From: Chara braunii
Taxonomy: Eukaryota; Plantae; Charophyceae
DNA length: 64,000 bases
Direction of reading: 5' to 3'
NCBI GenBank assembly: GCA_003427395.1
Contig: BFEA01000001.1
Span: forward strand, 1,281,314 to 1,345,313
Below the pieces are notes generated by a model. The model was given only the letters and a program-made list of their open reading frames with translations, ran no database searches and was not told the DNA's origin. The position numbers and the translations under genes are program-made. Positions within the stretch are counted from its first letter, which is position 1. Every line of letters begins with the position of its first letter. Positions 3,023-60,674 of this stretch are shown in pieces.

Positions 3023-4127
3023 CCGACTTCGCGCCGTGCGTGCCCTTCTGAATTAGTGCATGCGCTCACCGGTACGGCGCAGTCGCCCGTCTGTTACTTT
3101 TGCCTTTCTGAACAGATCTTTTTTCAATCTTGTCATCCCATGATTTTCAACTTGGTTCAATGCTAATGGAAAAAAAAAAAACAGGCGATGGATCATGACC
3201 AACAGACATTTCATTTTGGCCACAGAGCTAAACAACACGACAGGAGGGGAAGGTCTCGTTGTCTTATTTCATGCTTCTCGATTTCTGCCAATCCATGCCC
3301 TCCAGCATGGGCAAGAGGTGCAAGTCTCTCTTTCTTATTTCTTGCCTCGATTCTCTGGCAATCCAGACCCTCTCCTTTGATTGATGATTACTGTGCAGTC
3401 TCTCTGTGGGGCATCTAGGCGCATGGGTGGCATAACAATAGCACACCAAATTAAAATTCCACAGCACTAGAACAGAGACAAAAAAGTATCCGAAGTAAAA
3501 TTTACAACTGTCAGTCTTGTGATAGCATGTGCAAACACCCTGATGCTCATAACATCCCGCACATCCCCCGCATGTCCATCTTCACACCGAAAGTTCATAA
3601 CTATTGTACACATGCTCATGTACGTGCATCATCATCTTTTCTTCAACTCGCAGTTCCTGTTGCATGACTTGTCTAGAATAACATGCTCGCTTGTGCGAAT
3701 CAATACTTTTTCTTTTGCTTGCACTTGCTGCTGTATGGCATGCCTAGACTAAGTAGCGGTTGAGAAATAGCGGTTGAGTGCTTAATCAGCAGATCTTACG
3801 ATTGGCACTAGCTTTTTGCCTGAATCAGTAGTATTGAAGCACTGTCAAAGTCTCCCAACCGCTCATGCAACTTTAGTTTTCCAAGTGTGCTTGAATGGAT
3901 TTAGATCATTTCAGAATAACTTGGCAAATTGGCATCCATAACATATTTGATTACCTCAAAATCCTCCTTATCTTCATCTCAGCAATGGCTTTCCACGTTC
4001 AGCTGGCTTGGTATCATGCAAAACTACTTTACCTAGCTCGCAAGACTTGCTTCATAGGCCAACAATTTCACATTTCACAGTCTACATCCCATTTCCTTCT
4101 GTGTCAATGCTTGCTGTTGCTACTCAC

Positions 4128-6434
4128 CGCTAGTTGATCCCGAAAGGACTCGTTGATTCCCCCATGATGTGGTGCATCAAGAATAAGCTGGCTGGCAGGT
4201 TCAGAAAGCGCTTGGGTGGCAAGAATGCCCACTGCCTCGCCAGGTTGAATTACTTGACTTGAAGACCCATCTTTCGTTGCCTGGGTCACACCCCAGTCCA
4301 GGCCCCCGTACTTGAACTGCACGATGACCTGACCAAATCGCACAGTGCCATCATAGGCCAGAATGAGGTCTTCCATGCTCCGTGCAAGCCGCCTTGCTTG
4401 GAACGCTGGATCACCCAGCCCCACATACTTCTGCACAAGCCCAGTACGTTCCCCCATGGCATGCATGAAGAACTCTGATGGGCTAAGCCCATCTACAAGG
4501 GAAGATACCACTAATCCATTCTCTTCCCAGCAGCTTGCTGCTATTGTTTCATTTGTGGAGGGCGGTAGATTTGGTCCACCGGGATCACTGTTGAAGTGAG
4601 GAAGAGTACGTCCACCAATTTGTCCAGGAAAGACCCCACCATTCCACCCCAGATGCATTCCTACACATGCGGACTGCTTAACAAAATTCGTCATTGAACC
4701 TTTTGATCTTGCCCGAATCATTTGCATGATTGAATTCTCTCTTCGCACATGCAGCTCCAACTCCTTCCCCACCTTCTCTGTAACTCTCATCAGTGGAGCG
4801 GTAACCCTTGTGAAGAGCTGAGGTCGCTTTCTGAGACTCTGCAACCCACGCAATGATTTGAAAGTGTTCCAGCATTCCTCATTGACTTCTATACCCTTCA
4901 GAATCACGGTCCGATCATCTTTGCCGTCGCCACCTTCCTTGGACTTCCGTCTGCACCAATCTTGGACATGTCCCATTGGCGAGACTGTCGCCAGTAACCA
5001 CTCATTAATTGCTTCTTCCTTCGCATCCCTGATGAGGTCTGCTTTCTTTCGCTGGAACTCCCCCTGACCGTCTTCTATCAAAAAGTCGCCCAACCCGACA
5101 CTGAAACCGGCTTGCATCAGGTACTCGTGTCCAAATGACTGCAGCAAGTCGAGATGCTTGAGTACAAGCTTTCCTTGGCAACCTATCCCAGAGCTTGCCA
5201 ATCCTTTCTGATCCCAGATGGCTCTTAGCAAGCTTCTCTCTGTAGATCCTAACCATTTCATCCCCTCGACCCTCGTCAGGAGCTCGCCCTCATGTACCAA
5301 GACACTTTCCTTCTCACATTCGTATCTAAGCCATCTGGGCAAGGACATCCCAAAAACCTGCTGGCCCGTCCACAACGGAGTCCTGATGATCTTACCTGCG
5401 AAATCTGCTTTTGCTGACTCATGCGATGATGATTCGCCACTGCCATATATGCCGTTCACTGGGCCACACTTGATGATCGCAGGAGGTGGTATGCCCCTGT
5501 GCACAGCGCTTGTGATTCTGCTGGGGGTGACCTTCCCACTCTTCTGGGAAGATTCCCACCAACCATTACAATCACTGTCAACATCAAGCAGTGGCAAGAA
5601 CTGGGAAATATCCTCTCTTTTGAAAAAAACAAAAGTACTGGTCAACTTGTAAGCCGCCAAAAGAGTATCCTGGTTCAAACTCACAGTGATGCATCCATTT
5701 TGCACAGAGAGAACTTGTTTATCGACAGCTATGAGCTCACGGGCTTCTGCCTGAGACTCCAAACGACCAGGGACAAACACACTCATTTCGTCTCCATCAA
5801 AATCTGCATTGAATGGCTTAACCACAACTGGATTGATTTTGATTGCCTTGCCATCATGCAACTTTACCTTGAGTGCCATCATCGAATGTTGATGCAGGGA
5901 TGGCTGTCGATTCAGAACCACATAATCATTCTCCCTCAATGGTCTCCGGAAAAGGTTTCCAGACTGTGGACGCTGATCATAACTTCTGAGCTCCCTCCTC
6001 GCCTGCCGCTCGCAATCTTCCACACTGCTGCTTGTACTTCCATCCCTCGACCTTCGCATCTGGTTCAACTTTGTGGCTAGTAATGCTTCACCTCCATACT
6101 CATCTTTCTGGGCTAGCCTCAAGTTCTCTCTCTCCCACTCATCCATAACCGAGTTCAACAACCGCTCATTCTTATCAGTTACAACTTCGTTGACCTTTAG
6201 CGCCTTCTTCCATGTTTGGTAAATGAATCGCTTCGGAAGTCCAACCTCACAAATTTTAAGGCAGGGATCAGGCTCGATCACAGAGCGTGCACTATTGTCT
6301 GTCCGCTTCCCGATTATATTGTCTCGCAGTCGTCCCTTTGTCTTTTCTGTATTGCCGTTCGCATTGATTTGTTTTCGCCTGGAAAATCTTTGACCAAAGC
6401 TCAGCCTGTTCCGATAATCCCAATCATCCCAGAC
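4128..6434 (-). CDS. NRPD1: DNA-directed RNA polymerase IV/V-like largest subunit (NRPD1/NRPE1-like), main exon of 769 codons
   Basis: The ORF carries GKRTDNSARSVIEPDP, LNRQPSLH, PFNADFDGDEM (Metal A), QDTLLAAYKLT, GFSVGLGD, SKGS, GLSPSEFFMHAMGER, EDL..YDGTVR..QFKYG and, only ~20 aa later, PGEAVGILATQALSEP (foot deletion). Splice sites are TTGCAG|GTC at 6434 and GCG|GTGAGT at 4128. NRPD1 versus NRPE1 is not resolvable here. Confidence 0.88.
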
Positions 6435-6639
6435 CTGCAATCGAACACCAAGGCTCCACAGAGTCCACACAGTTGAAATCCAAGCCAGAACGCAGTTCAC
6501 AACACTGTCCAAACACCAACAAAAAAAAAAGACACCATTCTACAGCTACATTATGATACTCTTCAAATTGGAATAACAACTGCAACAAATCACACATGGA
6601 GAGACACCGCATCATCTTGGGCCTCAAACTGATGCATAT

Positions 6640-7234: not shown

Positions 7235-8169
7235 NNNNNNNNNNNNNNNNNNNNNNNNNNNNNNNNNNNNNNNNNNNNNNNNNNNNNNNNNNNNNNNNNN
7301 NNNNNNNNNNNNNNNNNNNNNNNNNNNNNNNNNNNNNNNNNNNNNNNNNNNNNNNNNNNNNNNNNNNNNNNNNNNNNNNNNNNNNNNNNNNNNNNNNNNN
7401 NNNNNNNNNNNNNNNNNNNNNNNNNNNNNNNNNNNNNNNNNNNNNNNNNNNNNNNNNNNNNNNNNNNNNNNNNNNNNNNNNNNNNNNNNNNNNNNNNNNN
7501 NNNNNNNNNNNNNNNNNNNNNNNNNNNNNNNNNNNNNNNNNNNNNNNNNNNNNNNNNNNNNNNNNNNNNNNNNNNNNNNNNNNNNNNNNNNNNNNNNNNN
7601 NNNNNNNNNNNNNNNNNNNNNNNNNNNNNNNNNNNNNNNNNNNNNNNNNNNNNNNNNNNNNNNNNNNNNNNNNNNNNNNNNNNNNNNNNNNNNNNNNNNN
7701 NNNNNNNNNNNNNNNNNNNNNNNNNNNNNNNNNNNNNNNNNNNNNNNNNNNNNNNNNNNNNNNNNNNNNNNNNNNNNNNNNNNNNNNNNNNNNNNNNNNN
7801 NNNNNNNNNNNNNNNNNNNNNNNNNNNNNNNNNNNNNNNNNNNNNNNNNNNNNNNNNNNNNNNNNNNNNNNNNNNNNNNNNNNNNNNNNNNNNNNNNNNN
7901 NNNNNNNNNNNNNNNNNNNNNNNNNNNNNNNNNNNNNNNNNNNNNNNNNNNNNNNNNNNNNNNNNNNNNNNNNNNNNNNNNNNNNNNNNNNNNNNNNNNN
8001 NNNNNNNNNNNNNNNNNNNNNNNNNNNNNNNNNNNNNNNNNNNNNNNNNNNNNNNNNNNNNNNNNNNNNNNNNNNNNNNNNNNNNNNNNNNNNNNNNNNN
8101 NNNNNNNNNNNNNNNNNNNNNNNNNNNNNNNNNNNNNNNNNNNNNNNNNNNNNNNNNNNNNNNNNNNNN

Positions 8170-8217
8170 AATTTGGACCATTTCTCGATTTATGCGTGTC
8201 ATCCTTGCGCAGGCGCC

Positions 8218-8249
<32 letters not shown>

Positions 8250-8267
8250 ACGGATGTCCCGAAGGAC
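8170..8267 (-). ncRNA. U6: U6 snRNA, near-intact copy (probably a retrocopy) fused to a LINE 3' end
   Basis: The reverse complement reads GTCCTTCGGGACATCCGTTAAAATTGGAACGATACAGAGAAGATTAGCATGGCGCCTGCGCAAGGATGACACGCATAAATCGAGAAATGGTCCAAATT, a plant-type U6. No USE/TATA is present upstream. Confidence 0.95.
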
Positions 8268-9773
8268 TGTCAGTCCGGTTCCTATTCCACCGGCAAGTCA
8301 GAAAATGCATTACATTACAGCAGAAACTCACGCTTACTTCCGTTGGTGGAGGATCGACTGTCAGCTTGCCATGACTCACTCTTTCCTCTCAGACCTGAAA
8401 AACCAGCTCTGCCAGATAGTGCTATGTCACCTAGAAAAAGCTCGCCCATTATTTCTGCTTGCCTGTGCTTTCCCCCTCATCAGCCCTGCCCATGAGTCAA
8501 GGTATCCCCTATCCCATTAAGCCTTTCCCCTTCTTTTGAACGCTACAAAAACCTAAACCCTAACCCCTCTGCCAGCGGACCTCACTGTCCCTTCTGGGCT
8601 GGGATTTAGGACTGTGTATCTGTTTCCTTTGAGTGATATGGGAGCCTGTCTTCCTTGTATCCTTACTCTAACATCCTCTGAGTCAACCCATTCCTCCCTT
8701 GCTCCAGCCTTCCGGTGGCGTACATCCATTCCCAGACTGTTCCTCAACGGACATGATGGTATAGGTTCGTCGTTTTCTCTTTGGGATTCTGATCAGGAGG
8801 TGCCTTGCCCGTGCACATCTATCTGCTGCCGAACGCTTCTTCCTGAGTTTGAGTTGTGCCAGTCCTTCCAGCAGATGCGGTCGTCTCGTAAATCAGGAAC
8901 TTTCCCGTTTCTCAACCATACCCTGCTGAATCTCAGTCTCGCCTTCTTTTGTTGTTCCTCATCGTCCAACCATGATAGTTTGATTTTCCGCCATCTGCAA
9001 AGGATTTCAGCCTGTATCATTGTTTTCGTCTCCGCCTTCTCATGAGTTGGACACTCTTTCGATCGTTCTGCTGCATCTTTCCTTCCATATGACCCATAGG
9101 GTCACCTTCCTGATAAGTCCATACCATACTTGCAAGCGCACGTCGTGCGCGAGTTTCCCGACGTCCGGCGCACGGGCCCGACCGTTCCCGCGCGGCGCAC
9201 GAGGTGTGCGGGGAACGGCCCGCCCCCCCCCCCCCCCCCCCGAAAAAAAAAAAAAAGGCAGGGGTCGAAACGGCACATCGGACGCCCCCCGCCAAAATTG
9301 TTGCGTAAGGCCAATTTTATTTTTTTTTCGGACCGCGCTCAAGGCCGGACCGCGAGGTTTCAAATTTTCGGAACCTGTTTCCAGTTCTTTCTACTCTGTG
9401 TGGGGTTGGCTGGGCCTCTTGGGTAGGTGTGTGGTCAGTCACGGCCATTCCTGCGAGGAGTGCCGTTGCCATTTCAAGGAGGAGCTGCCACCGTTCTCAA
9501 GTGCCGCCCCGTGCTGCCGTGCTGCCGTGCTGCCGTGTGAGGGAGGAGCTGCCGCCATCGCCCGGTGAGTATCACCGGCCTCGACCTCCCCTTCATCATC
9601 CTCACTGCCTCCTCCTCCTCCTCCTCCTCCTCCTCCTCCTCCTCTCCTCCTGCTCGTCCTACTCCTCCTCCCCTTCCTCGTCCTCCATCTCTCCTCCTCG
9701 TCCTCCGTTCTCGTCGTCGTCGTCCTCCTTCTCTCCCACAGGTGTCGAATCTGTCGAGTTTCTTTTTTTTTTT

Positions 9774-10604
9774 CCGACCTTTTCTCGATTTGTGCGTATC
9801 ATCCTTGCGCAGAGGTCGTGCTAATCTTCTCTGTATCGTTCCCATCCCTCCGTTTCATCTCCTCCTCCAGGTCGTCGTCCTCCCCTTCCTCGTCGCCCTC
9901 GTCGTTCACGACCTCCTCCTCTCCCACCCGGGTAATGTACTAGTGAATCTATCGAGCTTTTTTTTTTTTTCAACCTTTTCTCCATTTGTGTGTATCATCC
10001 TTGCGCAGAGGTTGTGCTAATCTTCTCTGTAGCGTTCCCATCCCTCCGTTTCGTCTCCTCCTCCAGGTCGTCCTCCTCCCCTTCCTTGTCACCCTCGTCG
10101 TTCACGACCTCCTCCTCTCCCACCCGGGTAATGTACTAATGAATCTATCGAGCTTTTTTTTTTTTTTTCCAACCTTTTGCGTGTCATCCTTGCGCAGAGG
10201 TCGTGCTAATCTTCTCTGTATCGTTCCCAAAGATTGAGAACGACACAGAGAAGATTAGCACGACCTCTGCGCAAGGATGACACGGGCTCGTCCTCCTCCA
10301 CCTCCCCTTCATCTGCGTGCTTCTCCTCCTCCTTCCGCTCGTCCTCCTCCTCCCTTCCTCGCCGTCCACCTCCTCCTCCTCTCCCACCTAGGTATCGAAA
10401 TTTCGAAAACAATCCAATCTATCGAGCTTTTTTTTTTTTTTTTTTTGGACCTTTTCTCGAATCGTGTGTCATCCTTGCGCCAGGGTCATGCTAATCATCT
10501 CTGTGTCGTTCCCATTGCGCCGGATGTCCCGAAGGACCCCGGTTTTTTTGTTCGACCTTTTCTCGATTTGTGTTTGTCATCCTTGCGCAGGGGTCATGCT
10601 GATC
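9774..10604 (-). repeat. Array of six degenerate U6 snRNA-derived segments
   Basis: Minus-strand copies lie at ~9774-9845, 9971-10041, 10169-10230, 10444-10537 (full length, including the GTCCTTCGGGAC 5' stem) and 10553-10604. A plus-strand copy lies at 10234-10284. All keep GCGCAAGGATGA and most keep ACAGAGAAGATTAGCA. Minus copies end in A-runs. Confidence 0.92.
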
Positions 10605-11196
10605 TAGACGGGCCTTTAGGGTTTGATGCGCAGGGGCCGTTAGGGCTTGATGTACAGGTACGGTCTTTTCCTCCCTCCACCTCTTCTCCTCCTCCATCTC
10701 CACTCTCCTTCGTCGTCCTCCAGGTCCTACTATAACCCCCCATCTCCTTGCCACATCCCCTCCGCTGGAAAACGCTGGAAATACCGAAAGTTTTTTTTTT
10801 TTTTTTTCGTTATTTACTGTCCCTGGACTTGCTGCTCGCCATATCCCAGTCTCCTGCATCTGCCATACTTCTCTCCTCCACTTGATTAGAAGGCAGACAA
10901 CATACCCCTTTTTTTTTGTCTGTTTTTCTTCGTTTCTGTTATATTATTAATTATTTTTATAATCGTCCACTTGATTTGAAGGCAGACTTCCGAAGACAGC
11001 GACTGCTGGCAATTGTTTTGTCTTTTTTTTTAAGTTTTTCCTGTTTGGCCAGCCGTGTTGAAAGGGGGCGGTGGTTCTGGAGGAGTCTACGCCGGGAGGG
11101 GGGAGGACATAGAGTCTGGTGTGGGTGAATTGGGGATGTAATGGGGACTATGGCTGATTTGGTGGTCCTGCCCGTTTTCGATGCGTGCAGGTCGCA

Positions 11197-13645
11197 ATGG
11201 CGAGCCGCAAGTTCACTGGCGACATGGTCAAGCGCCATTTCACTCCCGTTTCCACGGCAGGTAAGGATCCGTCGAAGGGGTCGTGCTGGTGCGTATGTAA
11301 TTACTGCGACCTCAAATTGTCCGGCACTCTTTCCCGTCTGAAGGATCATTTCTTAAAGGGAGTGTTGTGTTTAGAAAAGCCCAAGACGTCTCACGGCGGA
11401 GGAGATACTGCGCCGGAAAGAGGGGCAGCGGCGAGGAAGGATAGATGCGGGCATGCCAGCGGAGGGTTGCAGCATGCTTGCCACCGTCTCCAATTTGGTT
11501 ACTGCATCCATGGGTGGGGTTGTNNNNNNNNNNNNNNNNNNNNNNNNNNNNNNNNNNNNNNNNNNNNNNNNNNCGGACAGCATTGTCACAAAGAACGAGC
11601 AGACGTCAAGGAGGGTCGACCGCTGGATGACCTGCACCAATCAACCATTTAACATGGTCGACAACGAGTTCTTTGAGGACATGACGGACGCCGTACGGAA
11701 CGCCCCTGCTTCCTGGCAACTTCATTCGAGAGAGGCAGCACGCAATGGGAGATTGGACGGGCAAAACAAGAGCGCCATTGAAGATGTGGCAGGGATCGCA
11801 AAAAAGTGGGCACGCACGGGGTGCATGATACAGGTTGATGGGTGGTCTGCCCGGCGGGGAAGACCAAACATCAACGTTATGGTGTCCTCCCACATGGCAC
11901 AGTGTTCTGGAAATCGTTGTGTGTCGAAGGGAAGGACAAGGATGCGCAGGCTTACTTCCGTATACTCGAGGGGGCGATTGAGGAGATTGGGCCAAAGAGC
12001 GTGGTGGGCGTGGTCATGGACAACGCCAGAGTTTGTGTGAAGGTTGGGAAGATGGTGGAACAAAAGTATCCATGGATCTTCCGGATTGGTTGTACGGCAC
12101 ATGCCCTCGACCTTGCCTTGGAGGACATGAACAAGTCGTTAGTGGTTCAGAATGACGGTGAAGAGGGGGAATCAATTGGGGAAGTTTATCATGAGCCACG
12201 ACAAGGTGTGTGCTTTATTCCTCAGCAAATCCGGAGGTGCACAGATCAAGAGGCCGGGTGTGACTCGATTTGCCACAAACATCATCATGCTGAAGTCGCT
12301 GTCGGATGCGAGCAATGCCCTCAAGCTGGCAGTGGGCGATAAGGGGTGGGTGCCCGACATTGTGTGGCCCGACCTTGCCACGCAGTTCGAGGAGGCGATG
12401 TGGTGGGATGCATTTGGGTCGCGACTGTACCTTTTGCAGCCGCAAGCCATCAGACTGCTCGGCCAGGCAAGGTCATCTGCTGCATGCGAACGCAACTGGA
12501 GCTTACATGAGCTCATTTTCGGGAGTAGGAGGACGAGGATTTTGCCAACCCGCCTGTCGAAGTTGGTTTATAACAACTGGAACCTTCACCTGCAGCGGAG
12601 GCAAGAACACGGTCAGGGCGAGGTTGATGTTCACATCCCTTGGTTGGAGGACATGCCTGATGAGGAGAGGAAGCACGAGGCGGAGGCGTATTACAATGAG
12701 TGGGTGCGGCGCGTCAAGAGGCGTGCGAAGGATGGGGGGAGTGACTTGGAGGAAGGAGATGGGGGGGGAGTTGGGGAGGGGGATGATGACGAAGTCCCTA
12801 TGGCACGGAGGTGGCTGCACAATGACGACATGGACGACTACATGGACCAGCAGGACGGCATCAGGCAGCTCGACAATTACACACACCATTGGCACTTCAA
12901 CACAATGTCGGGGAGGCACCGAGAACGTCTCTTGAGGAGGCTGTCAGGCCAAGAGCTCCCAGCACCAGAAGTCCACTACAACTTGGAGGAGCGGGACCGT
13001 GTGCTGCGGGCCAGAGAGACGGGGGCATGGGTGGATGGCAGGGAAGAAGGTGGAAGCAGGAGGCAGCATCGGCGAGCACGTCCTGGTGAGGGGGACGGTG
13101 GCGGGAAGCGTACCGCGGAGGTAGACATTGCGCCTGCTCCGAAACGGGGGAGAGGACGACCGAGCAACAAGGAGAAGGCAGAAAGAAAAGCAGTAGAGAA
13201 AGCTGCGAAGAAGGAGTCCGCATCTGCAAAGAAAAAGAGTTCTGCTGCAAAGAAAAAAGCAGCAGCAGCGAAGAAAAAGAAGGGGAAAGTCATTGACGAT
13301 GACAACACCCCTCCGTGTTCGGCTTCATCGTCGTCATCCTCTGATGATGATGACGGTGATGATGATGCCGATGGTGATGATGACCGTGATGATGATGATG
13401 ATCGTGATGGTGATGATGATGGTGATGGTGATGATGATGGTGATGGTGATGACGGGGAACAGGATGGAGGTTCTGAATCTTCTGATGATGAGGACGAGGG
13501 GGGCAAACAAGAGGAAGAGAGTGGGAGGAAGGCGCTGCGGAGGGACAGGACGGAGGTTCTGAATCTTCTGATGATGGAGAGGCTGAGAATTAGGATCTGG
13601 CCCACAGCGAACTCGGAGGTTCACTGTTTTGCTGACTATAAGTGA
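11197..13645 (+). pseudogene. hAT transposase (BED finger, DUF659-type core, hAT dimerisation motif), frameshifted and internally deleted
   Basis: Motifs are CNYC...RLKDHF, GCMIQVDGWS..RGRPNINVMV, VVMDNA, CTAHALDLALED, RPGVTRFAT and WWDAFG...SSAACERNWS. The C-terminus has KRGRGRPS plus Lys-rich and Asp-rich tracts. Confidence 0.9.
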
Positions 13646-14213
13646 TATAACTGACTTAGCAACATTGCAATGGGGAAGCTATTTCGGATGTTGTCTTGTC
13701 CCAGGCTGTTTGTGGTTTCTTCGTGATGTGTCCGACAACTTTAACTTTCTGACACTGTGTCCCTCTGCAGTTGTCTGTTTTCATGACGAGGCACTCAGAT
13801 GCAGTGTTTCTGCATCTACAAACGTGAACAGGTGTGTACCGACCGAACAACCCGACCCACGGCATGAAATTTGATATTCGTGCAATGTCTTGGCAGTTGG
13901 AGTTCAAACTCCAAACTTCAAAGTTGAAGCTTGAAACTCAGTTGAAATTTCACTATTTGTGGTTCTCAGTCATATCAGCACAGGTAACACCTCTCGGACC
14001 CTCAGACCCCCCTTAAAAAAANNNNNNNNNNNNNNNNNNNNNNNNNNNNNNNNNNNNNNNNNNNNNNNNNNNNNNNNNNNNNNNNNNNNNNNNNNNNNNN
14101 NNNNNNNNNNNNNCCCCCGCACGGATCTCCGCACGGATCCGGTCTGTGCGGGTGCGGAATGTGCGGAGATCGAGCACCCCCCGTATGGATCTCCGCACAG
14201 ATCCGGTCTGCGC

Positions 14214-17200
14214 GGGTTGTTAGTCAGAAGGGGAAGTTGGATGGGTTGTTCAGGGAAAGGGCTCAGGAAAAGGGAGTCCCAGAGGGTCGAGGCTCTCACC
14301 CAGTAATCTGTCGCCTCCCTACAGTGTACTAAGCAGTGTACTATGTCCTCTACTGCACTCTCCGTACATACCTTACATTGATCAGAACTGTCGGGGTCTG
14401 AACTCTTCCGCCTAACGTGTAACCACTGATTAACTGGTAGTGCCGCGTATATGATCAGCCATTGAAGGCTTCTGATTTTGATTGGTCTGATTGTTTTATA
14501 AATCTTCCATGGGATCTGTGTGATGTTGTCGGCTTCCTGACCTATTAGCTTCTGCCACCTGGTCTTGATTGCCGGTTCTGGGTCTTTTGTTTTTAGCAGT
14601 AGCTTGTACCCAAATTTGACCGTGTAATCCTGTATGGCGGTGAGCGTCTTAATGTTTGTCCTCTTTTCTGGTTTCCATGCCCACTCCATCGGGTCAAACT
14701 CCAGGTTGTGTAATGCCGTATCGAATCTGAAGATAAACTTCAGCCATGTGCCTAACACCCTTACTTTTCTGAGCAAGAAGTAATCCATGACTGTCGTTTC
14801 CACGCTGGTGTTCATAATCGACGGCATTCCCTTCGTGCAATGTGCAATCGGAAAGGAGGTGAACACCGCTTGAGTAGCTGATCCCTGTTGTAGGTGTGAG
14901 AATTGGAAGGCCCTAGAGGGAGGATTCTCCTGTACTTTGACCCCCCATTCTTCGCTTTTCCAAGGGCCCCCTTGTTTCATCATACCTTTCCACTCCTGAG
15001 GGACAAGATTAGTAATGTACTGCAGGTTAGGTCCTCTTCTATGACAACCCTTCAATCATGCACTTAGCTCCTGCTCAGACACCCATTCCTTCTTCTCTTC
15101 GTTCCACAAGTGGCTAATTGTCCAAACTCCATTCTTTACCCACGACAGCCATTTGTGGTCTAAGAACAAGGGTTCATCGCTTTCTCCCTTCAACCACTCG
15201 TTGCCAAAAAGAAGCTGTTGCAGCACCTCATCCTTAGATTTCGGTCTATTNATCTTTTTTGGCATTATTTCCCTCCAAATCCGGATTAGAGCCGCCCAGT
15301 ACGGCGTTTGGCGGTTGTCTATGTTCCGCTCTATTTCCCTCCTGGGTCTTCTCCTCACCTTTTTCAAAGACCATTCCTTATTCATTACCCATAATAGATC
15401 CGTCATGTTGCTTGGCGATGACACCAGGGCTAGGGCCCTTATGCTGTCCAGGGCCAGCTTATTCCATGCCGTTTCTGGTTTCGTCAACAGACGGACTATC
15501 CATTTGACTTGAAGGGCTCTCGTCTCGCACCTCGGGTCAATGATTCCTGTATTGGTTTTCTTGAGATGTACTTCCATGATATCTCTGGAATACAACCTTC
15601 CTTGTTGGGGTTGCCCGTCCATAGATATGTTCTAGCCACTCGATTTAGTTCCTTTAATGAGTCATCCAAAATTGTCCATGCCGACGCAATGTACCACATC
15701 ATGGAGAAGACTGAAGTGTTGAGTACCAGGACCCTACCTATCAATGAGGTGAATGTATTCCCCCATCTTCCCAGGCGTGTCCCAGGACATGGCAGCCTCA
15801 GACCCTTGCAGGTTCGGGATTTGTTCGTCGGACAGCCACCAACCTATGGTCTTCTTCCAATTAATCTTCATTTTTTATGCCAATCCGAACGCTTCCATTG
15901 CCCTGGACAGTGCTTTAAAAGACGAATCTGATGCTCTAATCAGCACTGTCATGTCGTCTGCGAACAAGATTACTGTCAGAAACTTGAGATGATGAGACGT
16001 CCCTATGTTGACCTCTAGGAATCTGTGTACAGAGGGGTCTTTCCGTAGGAAAGAGGCAATGGCCTCCATCACAAATAGGAAGATCGAGGAAGCGAGCGGG
16101 TCCCCTTGCCTGACTGAGCGTGATATTGGGTAGCTATCAGACAGGAACCCGTTAATCTGTACATAGCCTGAGGCATCATTGTACAAGACCTGGACCCATT
16201 TCCTAAAGATTGGTCCCACCCCCATGAGTTCCATACTTGCGTCCATAAAGGACCAATTGACTTGATCATAAGCTTTCTCAAAATAAAAAAAGAGTATGGT
16301 TGTGTTTATCCTCCTTTCTCTGATTTTATTGGCTGCTTCGTTTAGAGTCAGCACATTGTCTAATATGTAGCGTCCAGGGATAAAGCCCGTCTGATCGATA
16401 TGAAAACATTTATCCGTTATTTTCATGATTCTGGCAGCCAGGGTCTTGGCAAGGATTTCGTATGGGAGAGTTAGTAAGGAAATAGGTCTATAGTTCCTAA
16501 TGTCCTCCTTGTCCCCCTTCTTATATAGTAGTGTAACAACACTGCTACTCAGTAAGCTGCCTAGGCCCCCTTTCTCATAGCTATCTTTGTAGAAGTTCAA
16601 TCGGTCCCCCCCTAGGTTCGGCCAAAATTTTCCCAGAATTCCCTCGTCAGCTCGTCAATGCCTGGTGCCTTGTCATTGTTCATGCTCTTAAGGGCTTGCA
16701 GAAACTCATCCAATGATAGGGTCTTGTCCAACTCTTCTGCTTGTTCTGCCGATATCGTTTGTTCCAAATATTGTAACATTCTTTGTCTTGCTTCCAATGC
16801 GTTGCTTGGGGTAGGTGTTTGGGTCTTGGCCTGATATAATTCTTGGTAGAATTCTTTAGCAATTCTCATAATCCCTTCACTAGTTTCCGCCGTCACTTCC
16901 AGGTTGCTGAGGGTTTTCAGTTTCTCTATTGTGGCTGCTCTTGTATTCGCCTTCATTCGGGCAAAGAAGTGCTTCGACATCAATTCGCTGAGTTCATATT
17001 CACACATTCTGGCTCTTACTTGCAGACCTTTTAGCTCCCACCACTTCCACATAGCTAACTCTTCCCGTGGTTTCTCAAATATGCCTGCATATAGTGTTGA
17101 GGACGGGTAGTCCCTCAGGTTGTATTCCACTATCTTCAGCGCCTTCTTCAGGCTTTGCTTCCTCTGCTTCCTTATAGAGGCCAGTTTTCTTGACATGTTG

Positions 17201-18224
17201 GCTGCTGCCTTCGCGAGTAAAGAGTAGCTCTCTATGAATCACTCCCACCGGTCATGGGCAAGTAGGCGGGTCATACACCTCTCGCTCCAATATTCCTGTA
17301 TCCCTTCTTGGAAAGTTTGACTAAGCAAGAGGGAATTGTTCAATTTGTGAAAGCTAGCCCCTTTCCTTACTCGTTCCTCAAAGCAGGTAGTGAGCTCGAT
17401 GGGTTTGTGGTCCAGTCCTTGGTAGGGTGCTAAGGGCAGGATCTCCGCCTCTTTCACCGCCCCCATCATTGTACCTGATACCAAGAAATAGTCTATCCTC
17501 GAGAAGGCTGTGTGATGCGCATGGTTCTTCTTGACCAGTGAGAAAACTCTCGACGTCGGGTGGAAAGTTCTGAAGGGATCTACTAGGCCACAATCTACCA
17601 TCAACCTCTGGACAAGGCCTCTTGTGAGTTGTATGTGTTGGAAGATCTGGATATGCGGTCTGATACCGGGTCTAGGGTTGCATTCCAGTCACCCACTACT
17701 ATGCACGACGTCAGAGGTGGGATCCTGGTCCCCATCTCTAACAAAAAGGATGTTCTTTCAAATGTGTTATTTGGGGCATAAATGTTGAGAAGAAAGAACT
17801 CTTCATCCTTCCACCTAAGATGCATAGAACACCATCTGCCCTCATTGAGGTCCGCTTCCTTGTTCAGAACACTTCCTGCCACGTAAAAACGTGAGGAGTT
17901 GGGGATCAAGATTGTTGTGCCCTTCGTACTCGAGACGTTATCTGCCGCCCATATTTCATCTTTGATGCCTCCCAGCTTCCTTGTCACGAATTTTTTGATT
18001 CTGTTGTGTTCTGTCAAAAATGATAGATGGGTTTCTTGCAGCATTATCAAGTCAGCTGGTGTTTTGTTTTTAACTGTTAATCCTTGGGCTATGTCATTCC
18101 ATTTTTCTTCTTTATCTATGACATTTCCCAATCCATTCACGTTCCACCACCGAATGATGATCCCTTGATCTTTCCGGTCCCTCCGGCACTCCCTCGAGTT
18201 TGCCATCTTCCTGAACCCCTCCAT
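14214..18224 (-). pseudogene. LINE ORF2 (APE endonuclease, reverse transcriptase, C-terminal zinc finger), frameshifted
   Basis: Consecutive ORF fragments 17601-18224, 17239-17604, 16612-17196, 15875-16600, 15496-15744, 15056-15622 and 13970-15055. Confidence 0.9.
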
Positions 18225-21200
18225 CCTCCAGGTATTACCGGGCTAGATCAGGTTAGCATCGTCCCACGAAACAGCCTACGAAGGCGCACTCCCCCCTGTG
18301 TCCATATCCAACGGCCCCTCCCCTTCTTGGGAACCTGAGGTGAACTGTCCTAAGTTTGTCATCCTATCCTTATCCTGCCGGGGGATCTCAAATAGGTCTT
18401 CACCGTCCTCATTGTTTGAGACTATCCCACCCACCTGGTCCTCTTCTTCCTTCTCGTCATCCGAATGCCATTCCAACGCCTCGTCGTCAGATCCGTCACT
18501 CATGTAAAACCTGTCCCAGTCCACCGGGTATGCTCTCGCATCCAGGTCTCCATCACCCTCCAACATTCCTGTAGCAACCAGCAGAGCCAATGAGACTGCC
18601 GCCATCTCTGCCGGCAGACTCGAGCCCACTAAGACACTATATGGCACTGCTGTGACCATCCTCCAGGGTCTCCATTTCATCCCTGATCTCAACTTTGTCG
18701 TGTTCGACAGCTTGACGATCAGCGGTCAGAAGGCTTGAGGTGAATGTCTTCCTTGTTCTGAGTGCTGCGAAGCTGAACCCTCGTGCTCTGGTTGGGGATG
18801 TGCGTCCTCGTGATCGAAGTTGCATGGCATGGAGTCGTACACCCCCAATGGGTACTCCGTGGATATCTTTTCGCAGAGTGTGGCAGCCACGTTTTGCCCT
18901 TCCTCAAAACACGGGATCTCGGGATCTGGAACGAGACATCTGTTGCAATCTGCCACTCCTCGAATTTTTCCACATACCTTGCAGCAATCAATGGGCGAAT
19001 ATTCATCAGTGTCATCTTGACGACCTGGCAGTCTCCACCACCAGAGGAGCCTGGTGTCCTTGGCTATGTGTGTGATCGTTGTGAATTCTGTTGAGTATTC
19101 CTCGTTCAATTTTTTCAGCTTGTCCATTTGCGCAATTACCACCGCCGCTTCCTTTTCCAGCTGTGGGCGCGCTGGGTCATCCTCAGCATCCATCTGAGAC
19201 ATATCCAGATTCTTCTTCTTCTGATTTTTCCCTGACCTCCATTTCTTAGGGCACAGATCTTGGAAGGACTCTGGAACAGTTCTAGCTCTGTCCTTCACCC
19301 CCTGTTCCCTTGATCTCTTCTTTTCAGCATTTCTGAATGTTGTGTATTCCGATAATTCTTCCGCCTTAACCTTCCTGAGGATGTCAAATTGGTTATTAGG
19401 TTTCCTTGATTCACCCAACCCCTTCTTACCACTTCTCTGAGATTTTTCTGCATGCTTGAGACAAGTTGCATGAATATCAAAAGCATGTTCCCTCTCCCTC
19501 TTCACCTTCTCCCCATAATCACTAAGCCACTGTAGAGACCTGTGAAGATCCTCCTCACTATCTGTCGTTGTGCTGTCCCCTTCACCTTTGCTCCCCTCTC
19601 TTGTCTTCTCGGACCCTGTTCCTCTCGAATCTGTTCTCATTTCCTCTCCTTCCTTATCTGCAGGAAGGCTTACCACCTCCTCTTTCCCTTCCGCATCCAC
19701 TGCCTTCCGCCTCTTAGGGCCCCCTTCCTGGATCCCTTGTGTCTTTCCATTTTCCATCGTCCTTTTGTTCTCTGCTTGAGCCCCTGTTCTGGTTTGAACT
19801 GTTGTTTGTTCCATCTTTGTCAGCATGCTTCTGAAACTCGTCGACTCCTTGCTAAATTCCAGTATTGCTTGTTCTCTTACTACTTCCAGATCCCATAGCA
19901 AGTCTTCTCTGTCTTTCTCTTCCTTGATAACCCGTGAATCGATCAGTGGGTCAGTGGTGATTTTCGACGGGTTGCCCGATACTTTCCCTGTGGCTCTTTT
20001 CTGCCATCTGCTGTCAGCCGGGGGGAAGATGTTTTTTTTTTTTACTACCGGTTCCTAGTCGGCATAATGCCAGACCCAGTCCGGATCCTCCAAGTTGTCG
20101 TCAAACACCCACCCGTTGTAGTTGCTGTCCGGAATGAACCAAATTCCAGGGGCATCCTCCACCTCTACTATCATGTTAGGGAGGAGTTTTCGTTCCTTCG
20201 GTTGATTCGGGTATTTGGGGCAGTTCGGGCTTGTTCCCATGTGTCCCCTTTCTCTGCAACGAAAGCAGATTGGGAAGGATTTGGTCGACATTTTGACTTC
20301 TACCAATCTACTTTCAATCTGAAAACAAAAACTTTGCGAAACCTTGCCTAGATCTCGTTCATAGCACTCCTCCGTACTGCCTCACTGATAACAAATAAAA
20401 AAATAAAAAAAAAGGGGGGGTGTTATCCTCTTCTTTTATTTTTTCATTTTATTATATTCTGTTGATTAGGACTGAGAATGAAAGTGCAGTTTTGTTACCT
20501 TTCTGCGTTTCCCTCCCACCTAGCCCTTTGTTTGCATTCCCGGTTTGGTTAAGTGCCTCGTCAGCAGTGCCACGACAACAGCAGTGACACGTCTGCAACA
20601 GTGCCACGTCAGCAGTACCCGCCACCATGACGGTTTCAGTTTTGGGCATGCCAGGCCAATTGGCCAATGAGTCCATTGCCGAGTACCGACAACGGTTCCA
20701 AGCTCAGCTCGCACTGATCGAGGCTGAGGAACAGCGCCAGGCGGAAGCCGAGGCTGCCCGCCTACAAGCTGAAGCAGACGCAACAGCTGAAAGCAGCGGC
20801 TCCAGGCCACAGCTGACGCAGACGCCCAGGTCCACCGCAAGGAGGCCCAGGATCTGCTGCAGCGGCACGAAGCCGCCAGCGTCGACAGGCTCAAGTTCTG
20901 GCATTTTGAACCATCCGAGGACCATGACAACGCGACAGCGGAAGAGCAGCACAAGGAGTTTCTCTCCAAACTCGTGACCAGGTTGGTTTACACTTGTAAC
21001 CACCTGCAGTCCGAGCTGGGGAATCTCCGACGGACAGTGCGGAACCACAAGGATCTGCATGAGGATGCCACACGGGCACTCCATTCCCGTGTACAGGACC
21101 TAGAGCAAGCAGCACCAGGACCAGATGCTCGCGAACCCAGCAGTGCAGCCTCAACCCGCCAGTTGGAGCAACGAGTTGAGCATGTAGTCGCAACGGTCGG

Positions 21201-25534: not shown

Positions 25535-26092
25535 AGAACAGACTGGAGACGACTGTACGACACTGAAAAAGGGGAGCGAGGAAGGGAAAGTTGACCAAAG
25601 GGATGTTGGAAGTAAGGGTGCAAGGAATACAGGCTCCCAAATCACTCAATGAGAACAGATTCCTAACTTCCAGCCCAGAAAGGGACAGTAAGGTCCACAG
25701 GTTGAGGGTTTAGGGTCAAGGGTTTTAGTAGCATTTAGAAGAAAGGGACAGGCTTAACGGGATAGAGGATACCACGATTCACAGGTAGGACAGTTAAGTG
25801 GGGAATACACAAGTATGCAGAAATGATGGGCGAGCTCTTTCTAGGAGACACAGGATTATTTGGCAGAACTGATTTTTCAGGTCTGAGAGGGAAGAGTGAG
25901 ACACGGCAAGCTGACAGTCAATCCTCCTCCTAACGGTGGAGCAATCAATGCTGTTCAGGGGTCCTTCGGCCATACGGAAGGAAGCGTGCGTTTCTGCTGC
26001 AATGTAATGTGTATTCTGACTTGCCAGTGGAATAGGAACCAGACTGACGCTCCCCAGAATAGAAGGAGCCAGGACCATAAGGCCCTGTTTTG

Positions 26093-26132
<40 letters not shown>
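25535..26132 (+). mobile_element. 5'-truncated LINE 3' tail with long poly(A), replacing gypsy RNase H and the integrase N-terminus
   Basis: Conserved tail at 25910-26090 and poly(A) at 26093-26132. No TSD; the gypsy pol jumps from the RT end to mid-integrase. Confidence 0.88.
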
Positions 26133-28482: not shown

Positions 28483-29169
28483 AGTCAATCACTAGCTACA
28501 CAAGGTGAAAGAACAGCAACCCCAGTAGCTCAGATAGGTGTGCTGTATGCTCAGACCAAGGACTTCATTGCAGCCGAGTTTAGATGCAAATGGAGGCAAA
28601 CAAGACCAGAGGACTTCATTGAAGCCGAGATTAGGTGCAAATGGAGGCAAACAAGACCAGAGGACAAGGGTAGACTCAAAGCACGGTTCAGTTGATTATC
28701 ACTGTTGCAAGGGAAGATTGCAAGGGTGGAGGAATTTCGGATCAAGCGGAAGAAACGACACAACTCAGTTACATCCAACAGGGAAATCACCAGGCTGCCA
28801 CTGAGGGAACAGAACCAAGACAGATTCTGATACTGAGAATCAAGCCGACAAACCCACTGAGATCAAGGCTGCACCTAAGTACATATCTCGTGATTCTCTA
28901 CATATCTCGTGATTCTCGTTTCACTGGTCAAAGCTGACAGGTTCCACAATGGAACTTGGTAGGAACTCATGAGAAAGGCAAGGGGCAGTCAATCCTCCTG
29001 AAATATGGACCAATCAATACCGGTCAGGGGTCCTTCGGCCAGACAGAAGGAAGCATGCGGGTGTAATTGATGTACATCGCGGACTTGTCGGGGGGAAGGA
29101 ACCGAACTGATGCTCCACAGAATGGATATGGAGCCAGGTCTCATAAGGACATGTTTTTCAAGAAAAAAA
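28483..29169 (+). mobile_element. 5'-truncated LINE 3' fragment
   Basis: Diverged conserved tail at 28985-29155, an A-rich end, and a candidate TSD GAAGAATCC (28474-28482 / 29170-29178). Confidence 0.8.
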
Positions 29170-29743
29170 GAAGAATCCTAATCTAGCCTAGCTAGGTCAC
29201 ATTTCCATTACATACTTATTCTCCTCTGCTGTTACTGACACTGGGTATGATGGTGGGGAAGAACTCACACATGCCCACACTTCAACACGAACGTTGCCAG
29301 CAGCAACTCAATGCCAAATTTCTTTTGATGGCTTCAATCAGAACAAACTAACAAGATGCTCGCTATGGGCATCAAGGTTGCACTTTCAGCATGTTGTATT
29401 GAATACAAAACAGTAGGTTGCCACAATGCACTCTGACTCCGAACTTGCAACAGGCAGGCCGCAAGCATAGGATGACAATGCAGAGGTGGGCTTGTGAGCA
29501 AACGTAGGCATCCTGAAATGTGGGCTGCGAGCATGGACAGGCAACAAAGTCACGGATTTGAAGCAAAAAGTGGCAGTTGAAAACTGAAGTTCAGGGCGTG
29601 CTAGCATTTTTGTGAGCTTTGCATGTCCTAATGGGCTTCGCATGTTTTGGCAGGTTTTCACCAACAGGTCCACGGATTGATCCCTGGCCATGGACTACCA
29701 ATCTTTGACCATTGCTTTTTCAGTACTCTGACTGAGTCCTCAC

Positions 29744-33574: not shown

Positions 33575-33689
33575 ATTTCTAATCCTAATCAAATCATCAC
33601 CCGTAGTAACAGCCAAATGTCGGTCACCCATCCCATAGTAGTAGCAGCCAAATGTCAGTCACCCATCCCATAGTGAAAGATCAACTAAG

Positions 33690-35388
33690 CATGGACCGGA
33701 ATACTACAATACACATGAATTTGACAATGAGAGATTGATAAGCACATGCACACGTAGGAAGGAGCATCTAAGTACGACCGGAACACTAGAACACACATGT
33801 ACTTAACAATATGAGGATTGAATTAGTGAAAAGCACATCCATATGGAGGAGAAATCAACTAACTGTGAACCGGAACACTACAACACACATGTACTTGAAA
33901 ATGGGAACATTGGACTAGTGAAAGGGCACATGCATATAGAGGAGAGATCAACTAAGTATGAACCGGAACATCACAACCTGCATGAACTTGACAATGAGGA
34001 GCTTGAATTAGTGAAGGACATATGCATATAGAGGAGAGATCAAACTTAGTACGAATAGGAACATCACAACATGCATGAACTTGACAATGAGGACCTTGAA
34101 CTAGTAAAGGGCACATGCACATGGAGGAAAGATCAACTAAGTATGAACCGGAACATCACAACATACATGAACTTGACAATGAGAAGATTGGACTAGTAAA
34201 AGGGCACACGCATATAGAGGAGAAATCAACTAAGTATGAACTGAAACATCACAACATGCATGAACTTGACAATAAGGAGCTTGAACTAGTGAAGGACACA
34301 TGCACATAGGAGAGATCAAACTTAGTATGAAACGGAACATCACAACATGCATGAACTTGACGATGAGGAGCTTGAACTAGTGAAGGACACATGCACATGG
34401 AGGAAAGATCAACTAAGTATGAACCGGAACATCACAACATACATGAATTTGACAATGAGAAGATTGAACCAGTGAAGGACACATGCACATAGAGGAGAGA
34501 TCAACTAAGTATGAACCGGAACATCACAACATACATAAACTTGACAATGAGAAGATTGGACTAGTGAAAAGGCANNNNNNNNNNNNNNNNNNNNNNNNNN
34601 NNNNNNNNNNNNNNNNNNNNNNNNNNNNNNNNNNNNNNNNNNNNNNNNNNNNNNNNNNNNNNNNNNNNNNNNNNNNNNNNNNNNNNNNNNNNNNNNNNNN
34701 NNNNNNNNNNNNNNNNNNNNNNNNNNNNNNNNNNNNNNNNNNNNNNNNNNNNNNNNNNNNNNNNNNNNNNNNNNNNNNNNNNNNNNNNNNNNNNNNNNNN
34801 NNNNNNNNNNNNNNNNNNNNNNNNNNNNNNNNNNNNNNNNNNNNNNNNNNNNNNNNNNNNNNNNNNNNNNNNNNNNNNNNNNNNNNNNNNNNNNNNNNNN
34901 NNNNNNNNNNNNNNNNNNNNNNNNNNNNNNNNNNNNNNNNNNNNNNNNNNNNNNNNNNNNNNNNNNNNNNNNNNNNNNNNNNNNNNNNNNNNNNNNNNNN
35001 NNNNNNNNNNNNNNNNNNNNNNNNNNNNNNNNNNNNNNNNNNNNNNNNNNNNNNNNNNNNNNNNNNNNNNNNNNNNNNNNNNNNNNNNNNNNNNNNNNNN
35101 NNNNNNNNNNNNNNNNNNNNNNNNNNNNNNNNNNNNNNNNNNNNNNNNNNNNNNNNNNNNNNNNNNNNNNNNNNNNNNNNNNNNNNNNNNNNNNNNNNNN
35201 NNNNNNNNNNNNNNNNNNNNNNNNNNNNNNNNNNNNNNNNNNNNNNNNNNNNNNNNNNNNNNNNNNNNNNNNNNNNNNNNNNNNNNNNNNNNNNNNNNNN
35301 NNNNNNNNNNNNNNNNNNGCTTGGACTAGTGAAAAGGCACATGCACATAGAGGAGAGATCAACTAAGTATGAACCGGAACATCATCAT
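33690..35388 (+). repeat. Tandem satellite A, ~92-93 bp unit
   Basis: GAACATCACAAC...GAACTTGACAATGAG...ACTAGTGAA...GAGGAGAGATCAACTAAGTATGAACCG recurs every 92-93 bp and spans a gap. Confidence 0.93.
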
Positions 35389-37909: not shown

Positions 37910-39193
37910 ATGCGAGGGTGGCTCCCGAGGTTAATTTCATGGCTGACGTGCAAAGGAGATTGCCTCTGCTCGTACTCGTTGTCGTCGTGTTCCTCATCGT
38001 CGTCTTCCTCCACGTGTGTTTGTCGTGGCGGTCGTGAAAACAACATCGCAAGAGGAGGGATTCAACGAAACGGGCGGGCAGGGGAACGTCCGATGGCGGG
38101 CATGCAGGCACACGCAGGTGTTGGTGCAGGTCAGGGCGGAAGACGACCTCCGACTGCGGACCCTCCACGGCGGTACGACCCATCTTTGTACAGCCATCTA
38201 GAGTCGTGGGAGACGCCACTGCCCCCGTCGGACGAGGACCCGCAGACGGAAGAACTTCCAACGTTGCCTCTTGCCAGCGGGTCGACGCAGCTGTTGTCGC
38301 AGACGGTGCGAGCATGCGAGTCGGCTAGCAACGAAGGCGACGAGTTCACCTCACTGCTGCACCAAGGCTTGGGAGACGACGACGACGGAGGACTTGATCT
38401 CAGGTTCGGGTTGTGTTCCGGCGGCGCTAGGGAGGCGAGCCGCACGTTCATCATCGACGCCGATCCTTCGCCACATGGCGTTCAACAATCTGGAAGTCAG
38501 CATACGGAGCACTCCACACTTCGTGGCGGTGCGTCCGTTACTAGCGGTGTCGGGCCATTGGCAGTAGGCCGGCAACACGGATCGAGTGCACCGTCCGCCG
38601 ATCGATTGACGAGTACCTGCCCCGCACCCAATGGAGTCGCAGCCGGGTCCTTGCGCATCGGCGGTGCACGTCCTTCGATGCCCAAACGCACAACGCCGAC
38701 CCAACCCAACCCGACCTCCGAGACGACGGCGCGTGCAGACCAGCGGTGCGTCCAACACCCACTGTGGAGAACATCACACGAGGAGTGTCAAACATGAGGC
38801 CACACAGCGATGGTGGCGACGACGATGGTGGTGGCGGTGACGATGCCGACGAATGATTCAGGAAGGACGTGGAAGCAGGGGACGACGACTACGACATTCC
38901 TATTCGGCCTTTGGGGAAGACGGGTGGGAGGGGGAGAGGACGCAGCAAAGGTGCTGTTCGTGGTCGATCCGTTGGTCGTGGGGACAAAGGTGGCGTCAAC
39001 GACGACGGCGGGAAGTCTGCGACGTACTGGTCTTCAAAAGAGCAAATGCAACTAGTGAGATGCAAGCGGGAGCAAGAGATGCACCTCGCCGGGCTGGGTC
39101 ACAATTACGGGCGGATGCGGACCAAGGAGTGGAAGTGGGACGACATTGCGAAGCGCATGGCGAACGCGGGGAGGCCTAAAGACGCGGACGACT
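37910..39193 (+). pseudogene. Harbinger accessory Myb/SANT (trihelix-like) DNA-binding protein, frameshifted
   Basis: YWSSKEQMQLVRCKRE...KEWKWDDIAKRMANAGRPKDADD follows a low-complexity N-terminus and runs into a gap. Confidence 0.8.

Positions 39194-42113: not shown

Positions 42114-42116
<3 letters not shown>
41149..42116 (+). pseudogene. Unidentified globular domain inside the Harbinger element, frameshifted
   Basis: Three overlapping frames give a continuous protein-like sequence, MTKDLIDRVVLWVDDKAFW...ALRILHGWVF...HYEAFYFANLVAKP...LDWLGSGP. Confidence 0.55.
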
Positions 42117-42144
<28 letters not shown>

Positions 42145-60100: not shown

Positions 60101-60674
60101 TGGTCGCAAATGAAGGTATACAACTCTCAAGAGGCCCAGAGGGTACAGACAAAGAGGGAGCGTGGGGGAAAGGAGGATAAATTGGGGAGAGCGACTACAC
60201 CAGAGCAAGAACGAGGGTTGCAAAGAAGGATTTCATCACAGAAGTCCGAAAGCAAATGAAGCCCCGCCAGGTCCAAGGTGGAAGATCGGAAGACAGGACC
60301 GCAGGCGAAAGTTTTAGGGTTTAAGGACAGATCGTTGATCATCCAAAGGGTCAGGGAGATGAGTGGGGAGGGAACAGGTCGACAAGGACAACGGATGAGC
60401 TCTTTCTAGGGTCAAGGGCGCTATCTGGCAGATCTGGTACCCAGGTCTGAGAGGAAAGAGAGGGACAGGGCAAGCTGACAGTCAATCCTCCACCGCAGTG
60501 GAGTAATCAATGCTGTTCAGGGGTCCTTCGGCCTGACGGAAGGAAGCGTGTGTGAGTGTTTATTGATGTAATGTACTTTTGACTTGCCGGTGGAATAGGA
60601 ACCGGACTGACGCTCCCCGGAATAGAAGGAGCCAGGTCCATAAGGCCCTGTTTTATATATATAAAAAAAAAAAA

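What the first reader, a model, noticed from the sequence alone, without database searches (positions are those of the whole stretch)
9140..14209. hAT-like DNA transposon carrying a tandem array of U6 snRNA copies upstream of its transposase
Seen: six U6-derived segments lie within ~830 bp of the element's 5' region. The first three are ~190-bp units of U6 3' part, A-run and a shared spacer. All keep the GCGCAAGGATGA stem-loop core and most keep the ACAGAGA box and AGC triad. Five are antisense to the transposase. Established: Dada transposons and some Tx1 LINEs target snRNA genes, but I do not know U6 cargo as a hAT feature. Inference: if the array is family-wide, it could be an antisense or decoy module acting on the spliceosome, a silencing shield that mimics an essential RNA, or a targeting element. 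The element sits ~870 bp from a near-intact U6 copy.
Basis: partly seen in the sequence, partly recalled or inferred. Interest (0 to 1): 0.88.

Follow-up and report, generated by a model that had tools for sequence, protein, structure and literature searches.

The report
hAT transposon carrying decayed U6 copies
A jumping gene in the alga Chara picked up one copy of the splicing RNA U6 inside an intron, multiplied it to six and carries it along, most likely as a decaying passenger, because U6 copies are very common in this genome.

Summary
Six U6-derived segments (82-92% identical to U6; five antisense, one inverted into a 51-bp hairpin) lie at 9763-10605 in a dead hAT (DUF659) element. All close relatives are from Chara braunii. 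The left terminal repeat is at 9125, not 9140. The right one was deleted. Relatives show 8-bp target duplications.

The array lies inside a predicted 5'-UTR intron (9565-11190) whose splice motifs are conserved across sister families. All units share a derived substitution and three share flanking spacer, so this is one A-tailed U6 retrocopy later duplicated as DNA. A second family copy (L001) carries units 4-5; sister families show none.

No extra conservation was found (2.7-4.1% divergence versus 4.9-5.6% for intron). U6 retrocopies occur about every 19 kb in the sampled flanks. The nearby U6 belongs to the host LINE's 3' end, so targeting is unsupported.

Best reading: neutral transduplication, like the fungal histone-H3 hAT. 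First readers noted similar arrays on other pieces of this genome (unchecked).

The parts
9125..9141 (+). Left terminal inverted repeat of the hAT element (17 bp)
   Evidence: 16/17 match to the reverse complement of the right end of family copy L001 (12668-12684); the same CATAC-starting repeat bounds L002, L004, L006, L009 and L010
9117..9124 (.). Left half of the expected 8-bp target duplication (LINE sequence); the right half was lost
   Evidence: Inferred from 8-bp duplications in relatives; about 12 codons of the LINE are missing at the junction
9142..9564 (+). 5' subterminal region and predicted non-coding exon 1
   Evidence: Precedes the conserved donor motif; similar layout in L002 and L006; no unusual fold over 9125-9420, z -0.8
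9565..11190 (+). Predicted 5'-UTR intron of the transposase gene; pyrimidine-rich, 7 T-runs; holds the whole U6 array
   Evidence: Donor motif shared with L002, L006, L010; acceptor a few bases before the ATG in window, L001, L006, L010, L011. Splicing is inferred, not shown by reads
9763..9845 (-). U6 unit 1: U6 positions 23-92 plus A-run, 90% identical
9959..10041 (-). U6 unit 2: positions 23-96 plus A-run, 82% identical; the 196-bp unit is 94% identical to unit 1 with its spacer
10155..10230 (-). U6 unit 3: positions 26-78, internally deleted, plus A-run
10234..10284 (+). Inverted U6 unit (positions 23-73); forms a 51-bp hairpin with unit 3
   Evidence: (array fold z -9.3; the hairpin is its one long helix)
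10428..10537 (-). U6 unit 4: full-length (1-96) A-tailed U6 copy, 85% identical; closest to the founding retrocopy
   Evidence: also present in L001
10543..10605 (-). U6 unit 5: positions 41-95 plus short A-run, 87% identical
   Evidence: also present in L001
11197..13645 (+). Broken hAT transposase: BED-like Cys/His N-terminus, DUF659, hAT dimerisation region, K/D-rich tail; three frameshifts, a 453-nt deletion and an assembly gap
   Evidence: Pfam DUF659 E 4e-21, Dimer_Tnp_hAT E 2e-4; 91% to CBR_g51014; breaks; the BED-like part is read by eye, with no Pfam hit
14114..14216 (+). 3' subterminal repeats; the last ~20-25 bp including the right terminal repeat are deleted, joined to the LINE through a short shared motif
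   Evidence: 92% to L001 12570-12660, where the element runs on to a terminal repeat
14214..19901 (-). Host LINE, 5' part (ORF1, endonuclease, reverse transcriptase, zf-RVT)
8269..9124 (-). Host LINE, end of ORF2 and 3' UTR
   Evidence: Frame continues across the hAT insertion; homologous to four other LINE 3' ends in the window
8167..8267 (-). Near-intact U6 copy fused to the LINE 3' UTR in place of its last ~35 nt and poly(A); not part of the hAT
   Evidence: 96 bits; alignment

Best explanation
A passenger. The element is an ordinary cut-and-paste hAT of a Chara DUF659 clade whose members have a long, fast-changing, pyrimidine-rich intron in the 5' UTR. Steps: (1) inferred: a LINE reverse transcriptase copied an A-ended U6 RNA into a T-run of this intron in an ancestor of one family, which fixes the antisense orientation; (2) shown by shared substitutions and shared spacer: DNA-level tandem duplication, deletion and one inversion turned that single copy into six; (3) shown for two or three copies: the element then transposed with its cargo; (4) inferred: the cargo is tolerated because it is spliced out, and it decays without selection. 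The window's copy landed in a LINE, lost its right end and accumulated frameshifts, so it is dead.
For: All units share G52A and, where covered, nearly all share T25G, T76C and T88A; units 1-4 share the motif after the A-run. Divergence window vs L001: U6 4/148 and 6/148, intron 14/287 and 12/214, coding 13/446, 37/940, 17/326; Fisher p 0.32 and 0.63. Core versus periphery changes are not skewed overall, p 0.28. Ten U6 copies, several A-tailed, in 188 kb of flanks give about 8% odds for any 1.6-kb intron to receive one. Sister-family introns without U6 also hold 5-6 T-runs, no A-runs, and internal duplications up to 886 bp. A-tailed snRNA retrocopies are a known class (PMC4476161). A DUF659 hAT carrying one or two inactive retrocopies of histone H3 is published (PMC6710886).
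Against: The ACAGAGA box and AGC triad have 0 of 31 distinct changes against 6 of 42 in free retrocopies (p 0.035; post hoc, units not independent). Five duplications all retained U6. Only one other locus of the family could be read, so the neutrality test is weak. The target duplication of the original retrocopy is not recognisable.
Confidence: 0.72

Rival explanations
1. Splicing regulator in cis. The antisense U6 segments in the transposase pre-mRNA pair with U6 snRNA (or compete with U4) and slow or tune removal of the 5'-UTR intron, limiting transposase. [quoted passage not shown]
For: The array lies in the predicted first intron. Five of six units are antisense, with 50-95 nt at 82-92% complementarity. 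Box and triad are unchanged (p 0.035). P-element precedent uses U1 snRNP (PMC7776569 and PMC4647562, listed; mechanism from my own knowledge).
Against: Sister families show no U6. No excess conservation overall. Orientation is explained by T-runs. Another note in this genome reports sense-oriented copies in a hAT intron (unchecked).
Confidence: 0.1
2. Small-RNA source or decoy in trans. The 51-bp U6 hairpin is diced into small RNAs matching U6 and the many U6-containing repeats, or the array soaks up U6-binding factors.
For: A near-perfect hairpin of U6 core sequence on either strand. Its arms differ at two sites and one indel, so it is not a simple read echo.
Against: Seen in one copy only; that part of L001 is in a gap. 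Inversions arise readily in unstable repeats. Attacking U6 would harm the host. No small-RNA data.
Confidence: 0.06
3. Silencing shield. Resemblance to an essential RNA gene protects the element from methylation or siRNA attack.
For: Only the argument that U6 pieces recur in several Chara repeat families (notes s1-529360 and others, unchecked).
Against: The units show C-to-T and G-to-A changes like free retrocopies. Among annotated proteins the U6-bearing family has one hit (P0001) against five or more for its U6-free sister family, so there is no sign of advantage, though this is a crude count.
Confidence: 0.04
4. Targeting module. The array guides insertion to U6 loci, as in Dada-U6.
For: 3 of 11 sampled elements have a U6 copy within 900 bp of an end (p about 0.07).
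Against: The insertion site is LINE ORF2. The near U6 is part of a LINE-U6 chimera. Two of the three close cases are other families with no U6 in their visible sequence. Terminal repeats and 8-bp duplications contradict Dada.
Confidence: 0.03
5. The number of units is partly an assembly artefact.
For: A short-read assembly with gaps; L001 holds a Nextera junction adapter and a falsely doubled block. No reads could be laid.
Against: Units differ from each other by 6-20% with private changes; units 4-5 recur in L001; no adapter or N lies inside the window's array.
Confidence: 0.05

Closest known systems
Histone H3-carrying hAT of Pseudocercospora fijiensis and Pyrenophora tritici-repentis (transduplication; PMC6710886)
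   Same: DUF659 hAT, 8-bp target duplication, cargo captured as a retrocopy of a housekeeping RNA, more than one copy per element, inactive
   Different: Cargo here is a spliceosomal snRNA, amplified to six units with an inversion, antisense and inside a predicted intron
Plant DUF659 / Dimer_Tnp_hAT hAT transposons
   Same: Domains, D-D-CxxH-E motifs, short terminal repeats, 8-bp duplications, subterminal repeats; land-plant relatives at about 30% identity
   Different: U6 cargo; this copy is broken and lacks the right end
Poly(A)-extended U6 processed pseudogenes and U6-LINE chimeras (PMC4476161)
   Same: U6 followed by an A-rich tail, no external promoter
   Different: Spread afterwards by a DNA transposon; the neighbouring chimera has the LINE upstream of U6, the reverse of the mammalian order
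Dada-U6 DNA transposons (PMC3706591)
   Same: DNA transposon associated with U6, transposase often opposite to U6
   Different: Dada inserts into U6 with a 6-bp duplication and has no terminal inverted repeats; here U6 is internal cargo of a hAT with terminal repeats and an 8-bp duplication
SINEU (PMC4494074) and Pack-TYPE elements (PMC8903248)
   Same: snRNA-derived sequence in a mobile element; capture of host sequence by plant DNA transposons
   Different: SINEU are retroposons with snRNA heads (U1/U2, from memory); Pack-TYPE elements are non-autonomous and carry coding DNA

Membership tests
hAT superfamily | Transposase with DUF659 and hAT dimerisation region, D-D-CxxH-E motifs | tested here: met
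   Pfam hits on window pieces and P0002; motifs visible in translations. No solved-structure hit by sequence
hAT superfamily | Short terminal inverted repeats | tested here: met
   Left repeat at 9125 matches the right repeat of family copy L001 at 16/17; both ends present in L002, L004, L006, L009, L010. Right repeat deleted in the window copy
hAT superfamily | 8-bp target site duplication | tested here: met
   Met at clade level: perfect in L004, L006, L010; 7/8 in L002; no match in L009. Not testable in the window copy or L001, each missing one end
hAT superfamily | N-terminal BED zinc finger | tested here: inconclusive
   W-x-C-x-Y-C...H...C pattern conserved in window, L006, L010; no Pfam hit
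Dada | Inserted inside a small-RNA gene with a 6-7 bp duplication | tested here: not met
   Inserted in LINE ORF2; relatives give 8 bp
Dada | No terminal inverted repeats | tested here: not met
   Terminal repeats present
Transduplicating hAT (captured host RNA copy) | Host sequence between the termini, shared by several copies | tested here: met
   Units 4-5 at the same place in L001, in two slightly different versions
Poly(A)-extended U6 retrocopy | A-rich tail directly after U6 | tested here: met
   All five antisense units
Poly(A)-extended U6 retrocopy | Flanking target duplication | tested here: inconclusive
   Obscured by later duplications; no empty site of this family available
Functional U6 snRNA gene | Full length, intact stems, T-run terminator, upstream promoter | tested here: not met
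   Only unit 4 is full length; 14 substitutions; A-run replaces the T-run; another U6 piece lies directly upstream
Functional antisense or small-RNA module | Transcribed and processed in vivo | not testable with these tools

The most novel reading that the evidence does not exclude
A DNA transposon family has kept and amplified antisense copies of the U6 catalytic core in its transposase's first intron because they pair with U6 snRNA and tune splicing (or yield small RNAs), so the element regulates itself through the spliceosome's catalytic RNA.
Probability: 0.12. Interest if true: 0.82.

Novelty: new variant of a known kind. Interest (0 to 1): 0.36.

Why it matters
As it stands it extends transduplication by hAT elements to a spliceosomal RNA, for which I found no report in the papers searched. 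It shows how U6 sequence spreads in Chara by a second, DNA-level route. The more striking fact is the background, about one U6 retrocopy per 19 kb in the sampled DNA; if representative, that means tens of thousands per genome, against hundreds and up in the mammals surveyed in PMC4476161. If the array were shown to control splicing, it would be a new form of transposon self-regulation, and the U6-free sister families would be a natural control.

Tried and rejected
Expression, splicing, gap content and copy number are therefore untested by reads. The run search showed only 6-14% of words in presumed RNA contigs, which may come from relatives.

More family copies: three protein searches gave only one close member, P0001. 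Sister elements L005, L006, L010 and L011 have gaps in the intron, so absence of U6 is fully shown only for L002.

Other checks: other Rfam hits (miRNA models) are generic hairpin matches below threshold. No solved-structure match. The first tree run timed out; the FastTree version was used.

Rejected: Dada membership; an element without terminal repeats and with a 4-bp duplication (note s1-555341); independent insertions of six U6 copies (shared derived changes); the doubled block in L001 as real (Nextera adapter). Literature searches found no hAT with U6 cargo and nothing on Chara U6 copies.
Full report
Source and element. All close relatives of the transposase are Chara braunii proteins, the best at 91% (CBR_g51014, P0001). 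Land-plant DUF659 proteins follow at about 30%. The window's pieces hit DUF659 and the hAT dimerisation region. Comparing loci defined the ends. A 17-bp repeat starting at 9125 matches the right end of family copy L001 at 16/17, and the same repeat bounds five other elements of the clade; three have perfect 8-bp target duplications, one 7/8 and one none. This is a normal hAT. The window copy interrupts ORF2 of a full-length LINE on the minus strand. Against another LINE copy in the window, about 12 codons are missing at the junction along with the hAT's last 20-25 bp, so one deletion removed the right repeat and the right target duplication.

Assembly gaps. Both sides of 11524-11573 map in order on three relatives. 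L006 has about 155 nt there against 56 here, so the gap is probably underestimated and the frame unknown. The gene is broken regardless: frameshifts at 11361, about 11895 and 12140, and a 453-nt deletion at 12394. The sides of 14022-14113 match the 3' region of L002/L010 (a short match) and the subterminal repeats of L001. Continuity is by synteny only.

The array. Rfam finds five segments above threshold and a sixth at E 6e-6. They are 82-92% identical to U6. All share G52A and, where covered, nearly all share T25G, T76C and T88A; units 1-3 and the inverted unit also share T50C and C55T. Units 1-4 share the motif after the A-run, and units 1 and 2 are a 196-bp repeat at 94%. So one full-length A-tailed U6 copy was captured and then duplicated with its flanking DNA. 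Unit 3 and the inverted unit form a 51-bp hairpin.

Position. A donor motif at 9565 is conserved in L002, L006 and L010, and an acceptor lies a few bases before the start codon in the window, L001, L006, L010 and L011. The array therefore falls inside a predicted 1.6-kb 5'-UTR intron. In relatives this intron is 2.2-5 kb, pyrimidine-rich, with T-runs but no A-runs on the sense strand and with large internal duplications. From established knowledge of target-primed reverse transcription, an A-tailed RNA primes at a T-run and ends up antisense to the T-rich strand, so the orientation needs no function. Splicing itself is inferred.

Distribution. L001 has units 4 and 5 at the same place, in two versions about 3% apart and separated by a Nextera junction adapter. 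That is an assembly artefact, probably reads from two copies. The tree places P0001 with two sister families. Their visible sequence holds no U6, and neither do four more distant elements (about 44 kb in all), though most have gaps in the intron. First readers noted U6 arrays in hAT-like elements on at least four other pieces (unchecked). The cargo is thus family-level, not clade-wide.

Selection. Between the window and L001, U6 segments differ at 2.7% and 4.1% of sites, the intron at 4.9-5.6% and coding DNA at 2.9-5.2%; the differences are not significant. The internal stem-loop has 11 distinct changes, including one in the loop core in L001. One signal points the other way: no change in the ACAGAGA box or AGC triad (0 of 31, against 6 of 42 in free retrocopies; p 0.035, post hoc, non-independent). 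Power is low.

Background and targeting. Ten U6 copies lie in 188 kb of flanking DNA, one per 19 kb, several A-tailed. These flanks were chosen around hAT elements, so the rate may be biased. At that rate a 1.6-kb intron has about 8% odds of receiving one, and the clade has many families. The near-intact U6 at 8167-8267 replaces the last 35 nt and poly(A) of the host LINE. Its distance is simply the rest of the LINE, and such proximity has about 9% odds. Three of 11 elements have a U6 within 900 bp (p 0.07). Dada's defining features are not met.

Expression could not be tested.

Comparison. It works like the fungal DUF659 hAT that carries one or two dead histone H3 retrocopies (PMC6710886), with a founding event of the A-tailed snRNA pseudogene class (PMC4476161). 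I found no report of U6 cargo in a hAT.

Verdict. Real, a member of hAT, not of Dada; a new variant of a known kind. Most likely a neutral passenger (0.72). Regulatory readings together are about 0.2, of which the antisense-splicing idea is the one worth testing. Interest 0.36.

Noticed in passing
window 8167-8742 (minus strand): LINE 3' UTR fused directly to a full-length, 99%-intact U6 in place of its last ~35 nt and poly(A); reverse of the mammalian U6-L1 order. Four other copies of this 3' UTR (1326-1730, 25536-26120, 28970-29200, 60386-60680) end normally. The 3' end of the U6 runs into a gap.
   Followed up: partly
window ~25880-25930 and homologous LINE 3' UTRs: The LINE 3' UTR contains a 9-nt match to U6 positions 1-9, inside a 42-nt stretch deleted in the chimeric copy. 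It may be chance or may bear on why this LINE copies U6 so often.
   Followed up: no
L002 16462; L004 10158, 11755; L007 6342; L008 269, 1752, 11846; L009 652; L010 7432, 8015: Very high density of U6 retrocopies, about 1 per 19 kb, several A-tailed or 3'-truncated, some with small internal insertions.
   Followed up: partly
L001 8965-9005: Nextera mate-pair junction adapter inside the public assembly, joining two near-identical pieces of the element.
   Followed up: yes
window 10606-10867: A 262-bp stretch after unit 5 that is absent from L001; it holds two telomere-like boxes and a possible extra splice donor near 10659.
   Followed up: no
window 4104-6512 (minus strand): An 802-codon ORF with RNA polymerase largest-subunit domains 2-5, divergent, possibly Pol IV/V-like.
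   Followed up: partly
window 33675-37308 and 44400-45822: Two tandem arrays with periods near 90 bp (self-comparison).
   Followed up: no
window 38869-43852: Myb/SANT-like ORF and an ORF that looks by eye like a Harbinger-type transposase; no Pfam hit for the latter at E 0.001.
   Followed up: no
L005 11579, L002 13460-14900: Further elements start right next to the sampled hATs (a second left terminal repeat of the same clade in L005), suggesting clustering.
   Followed up: no
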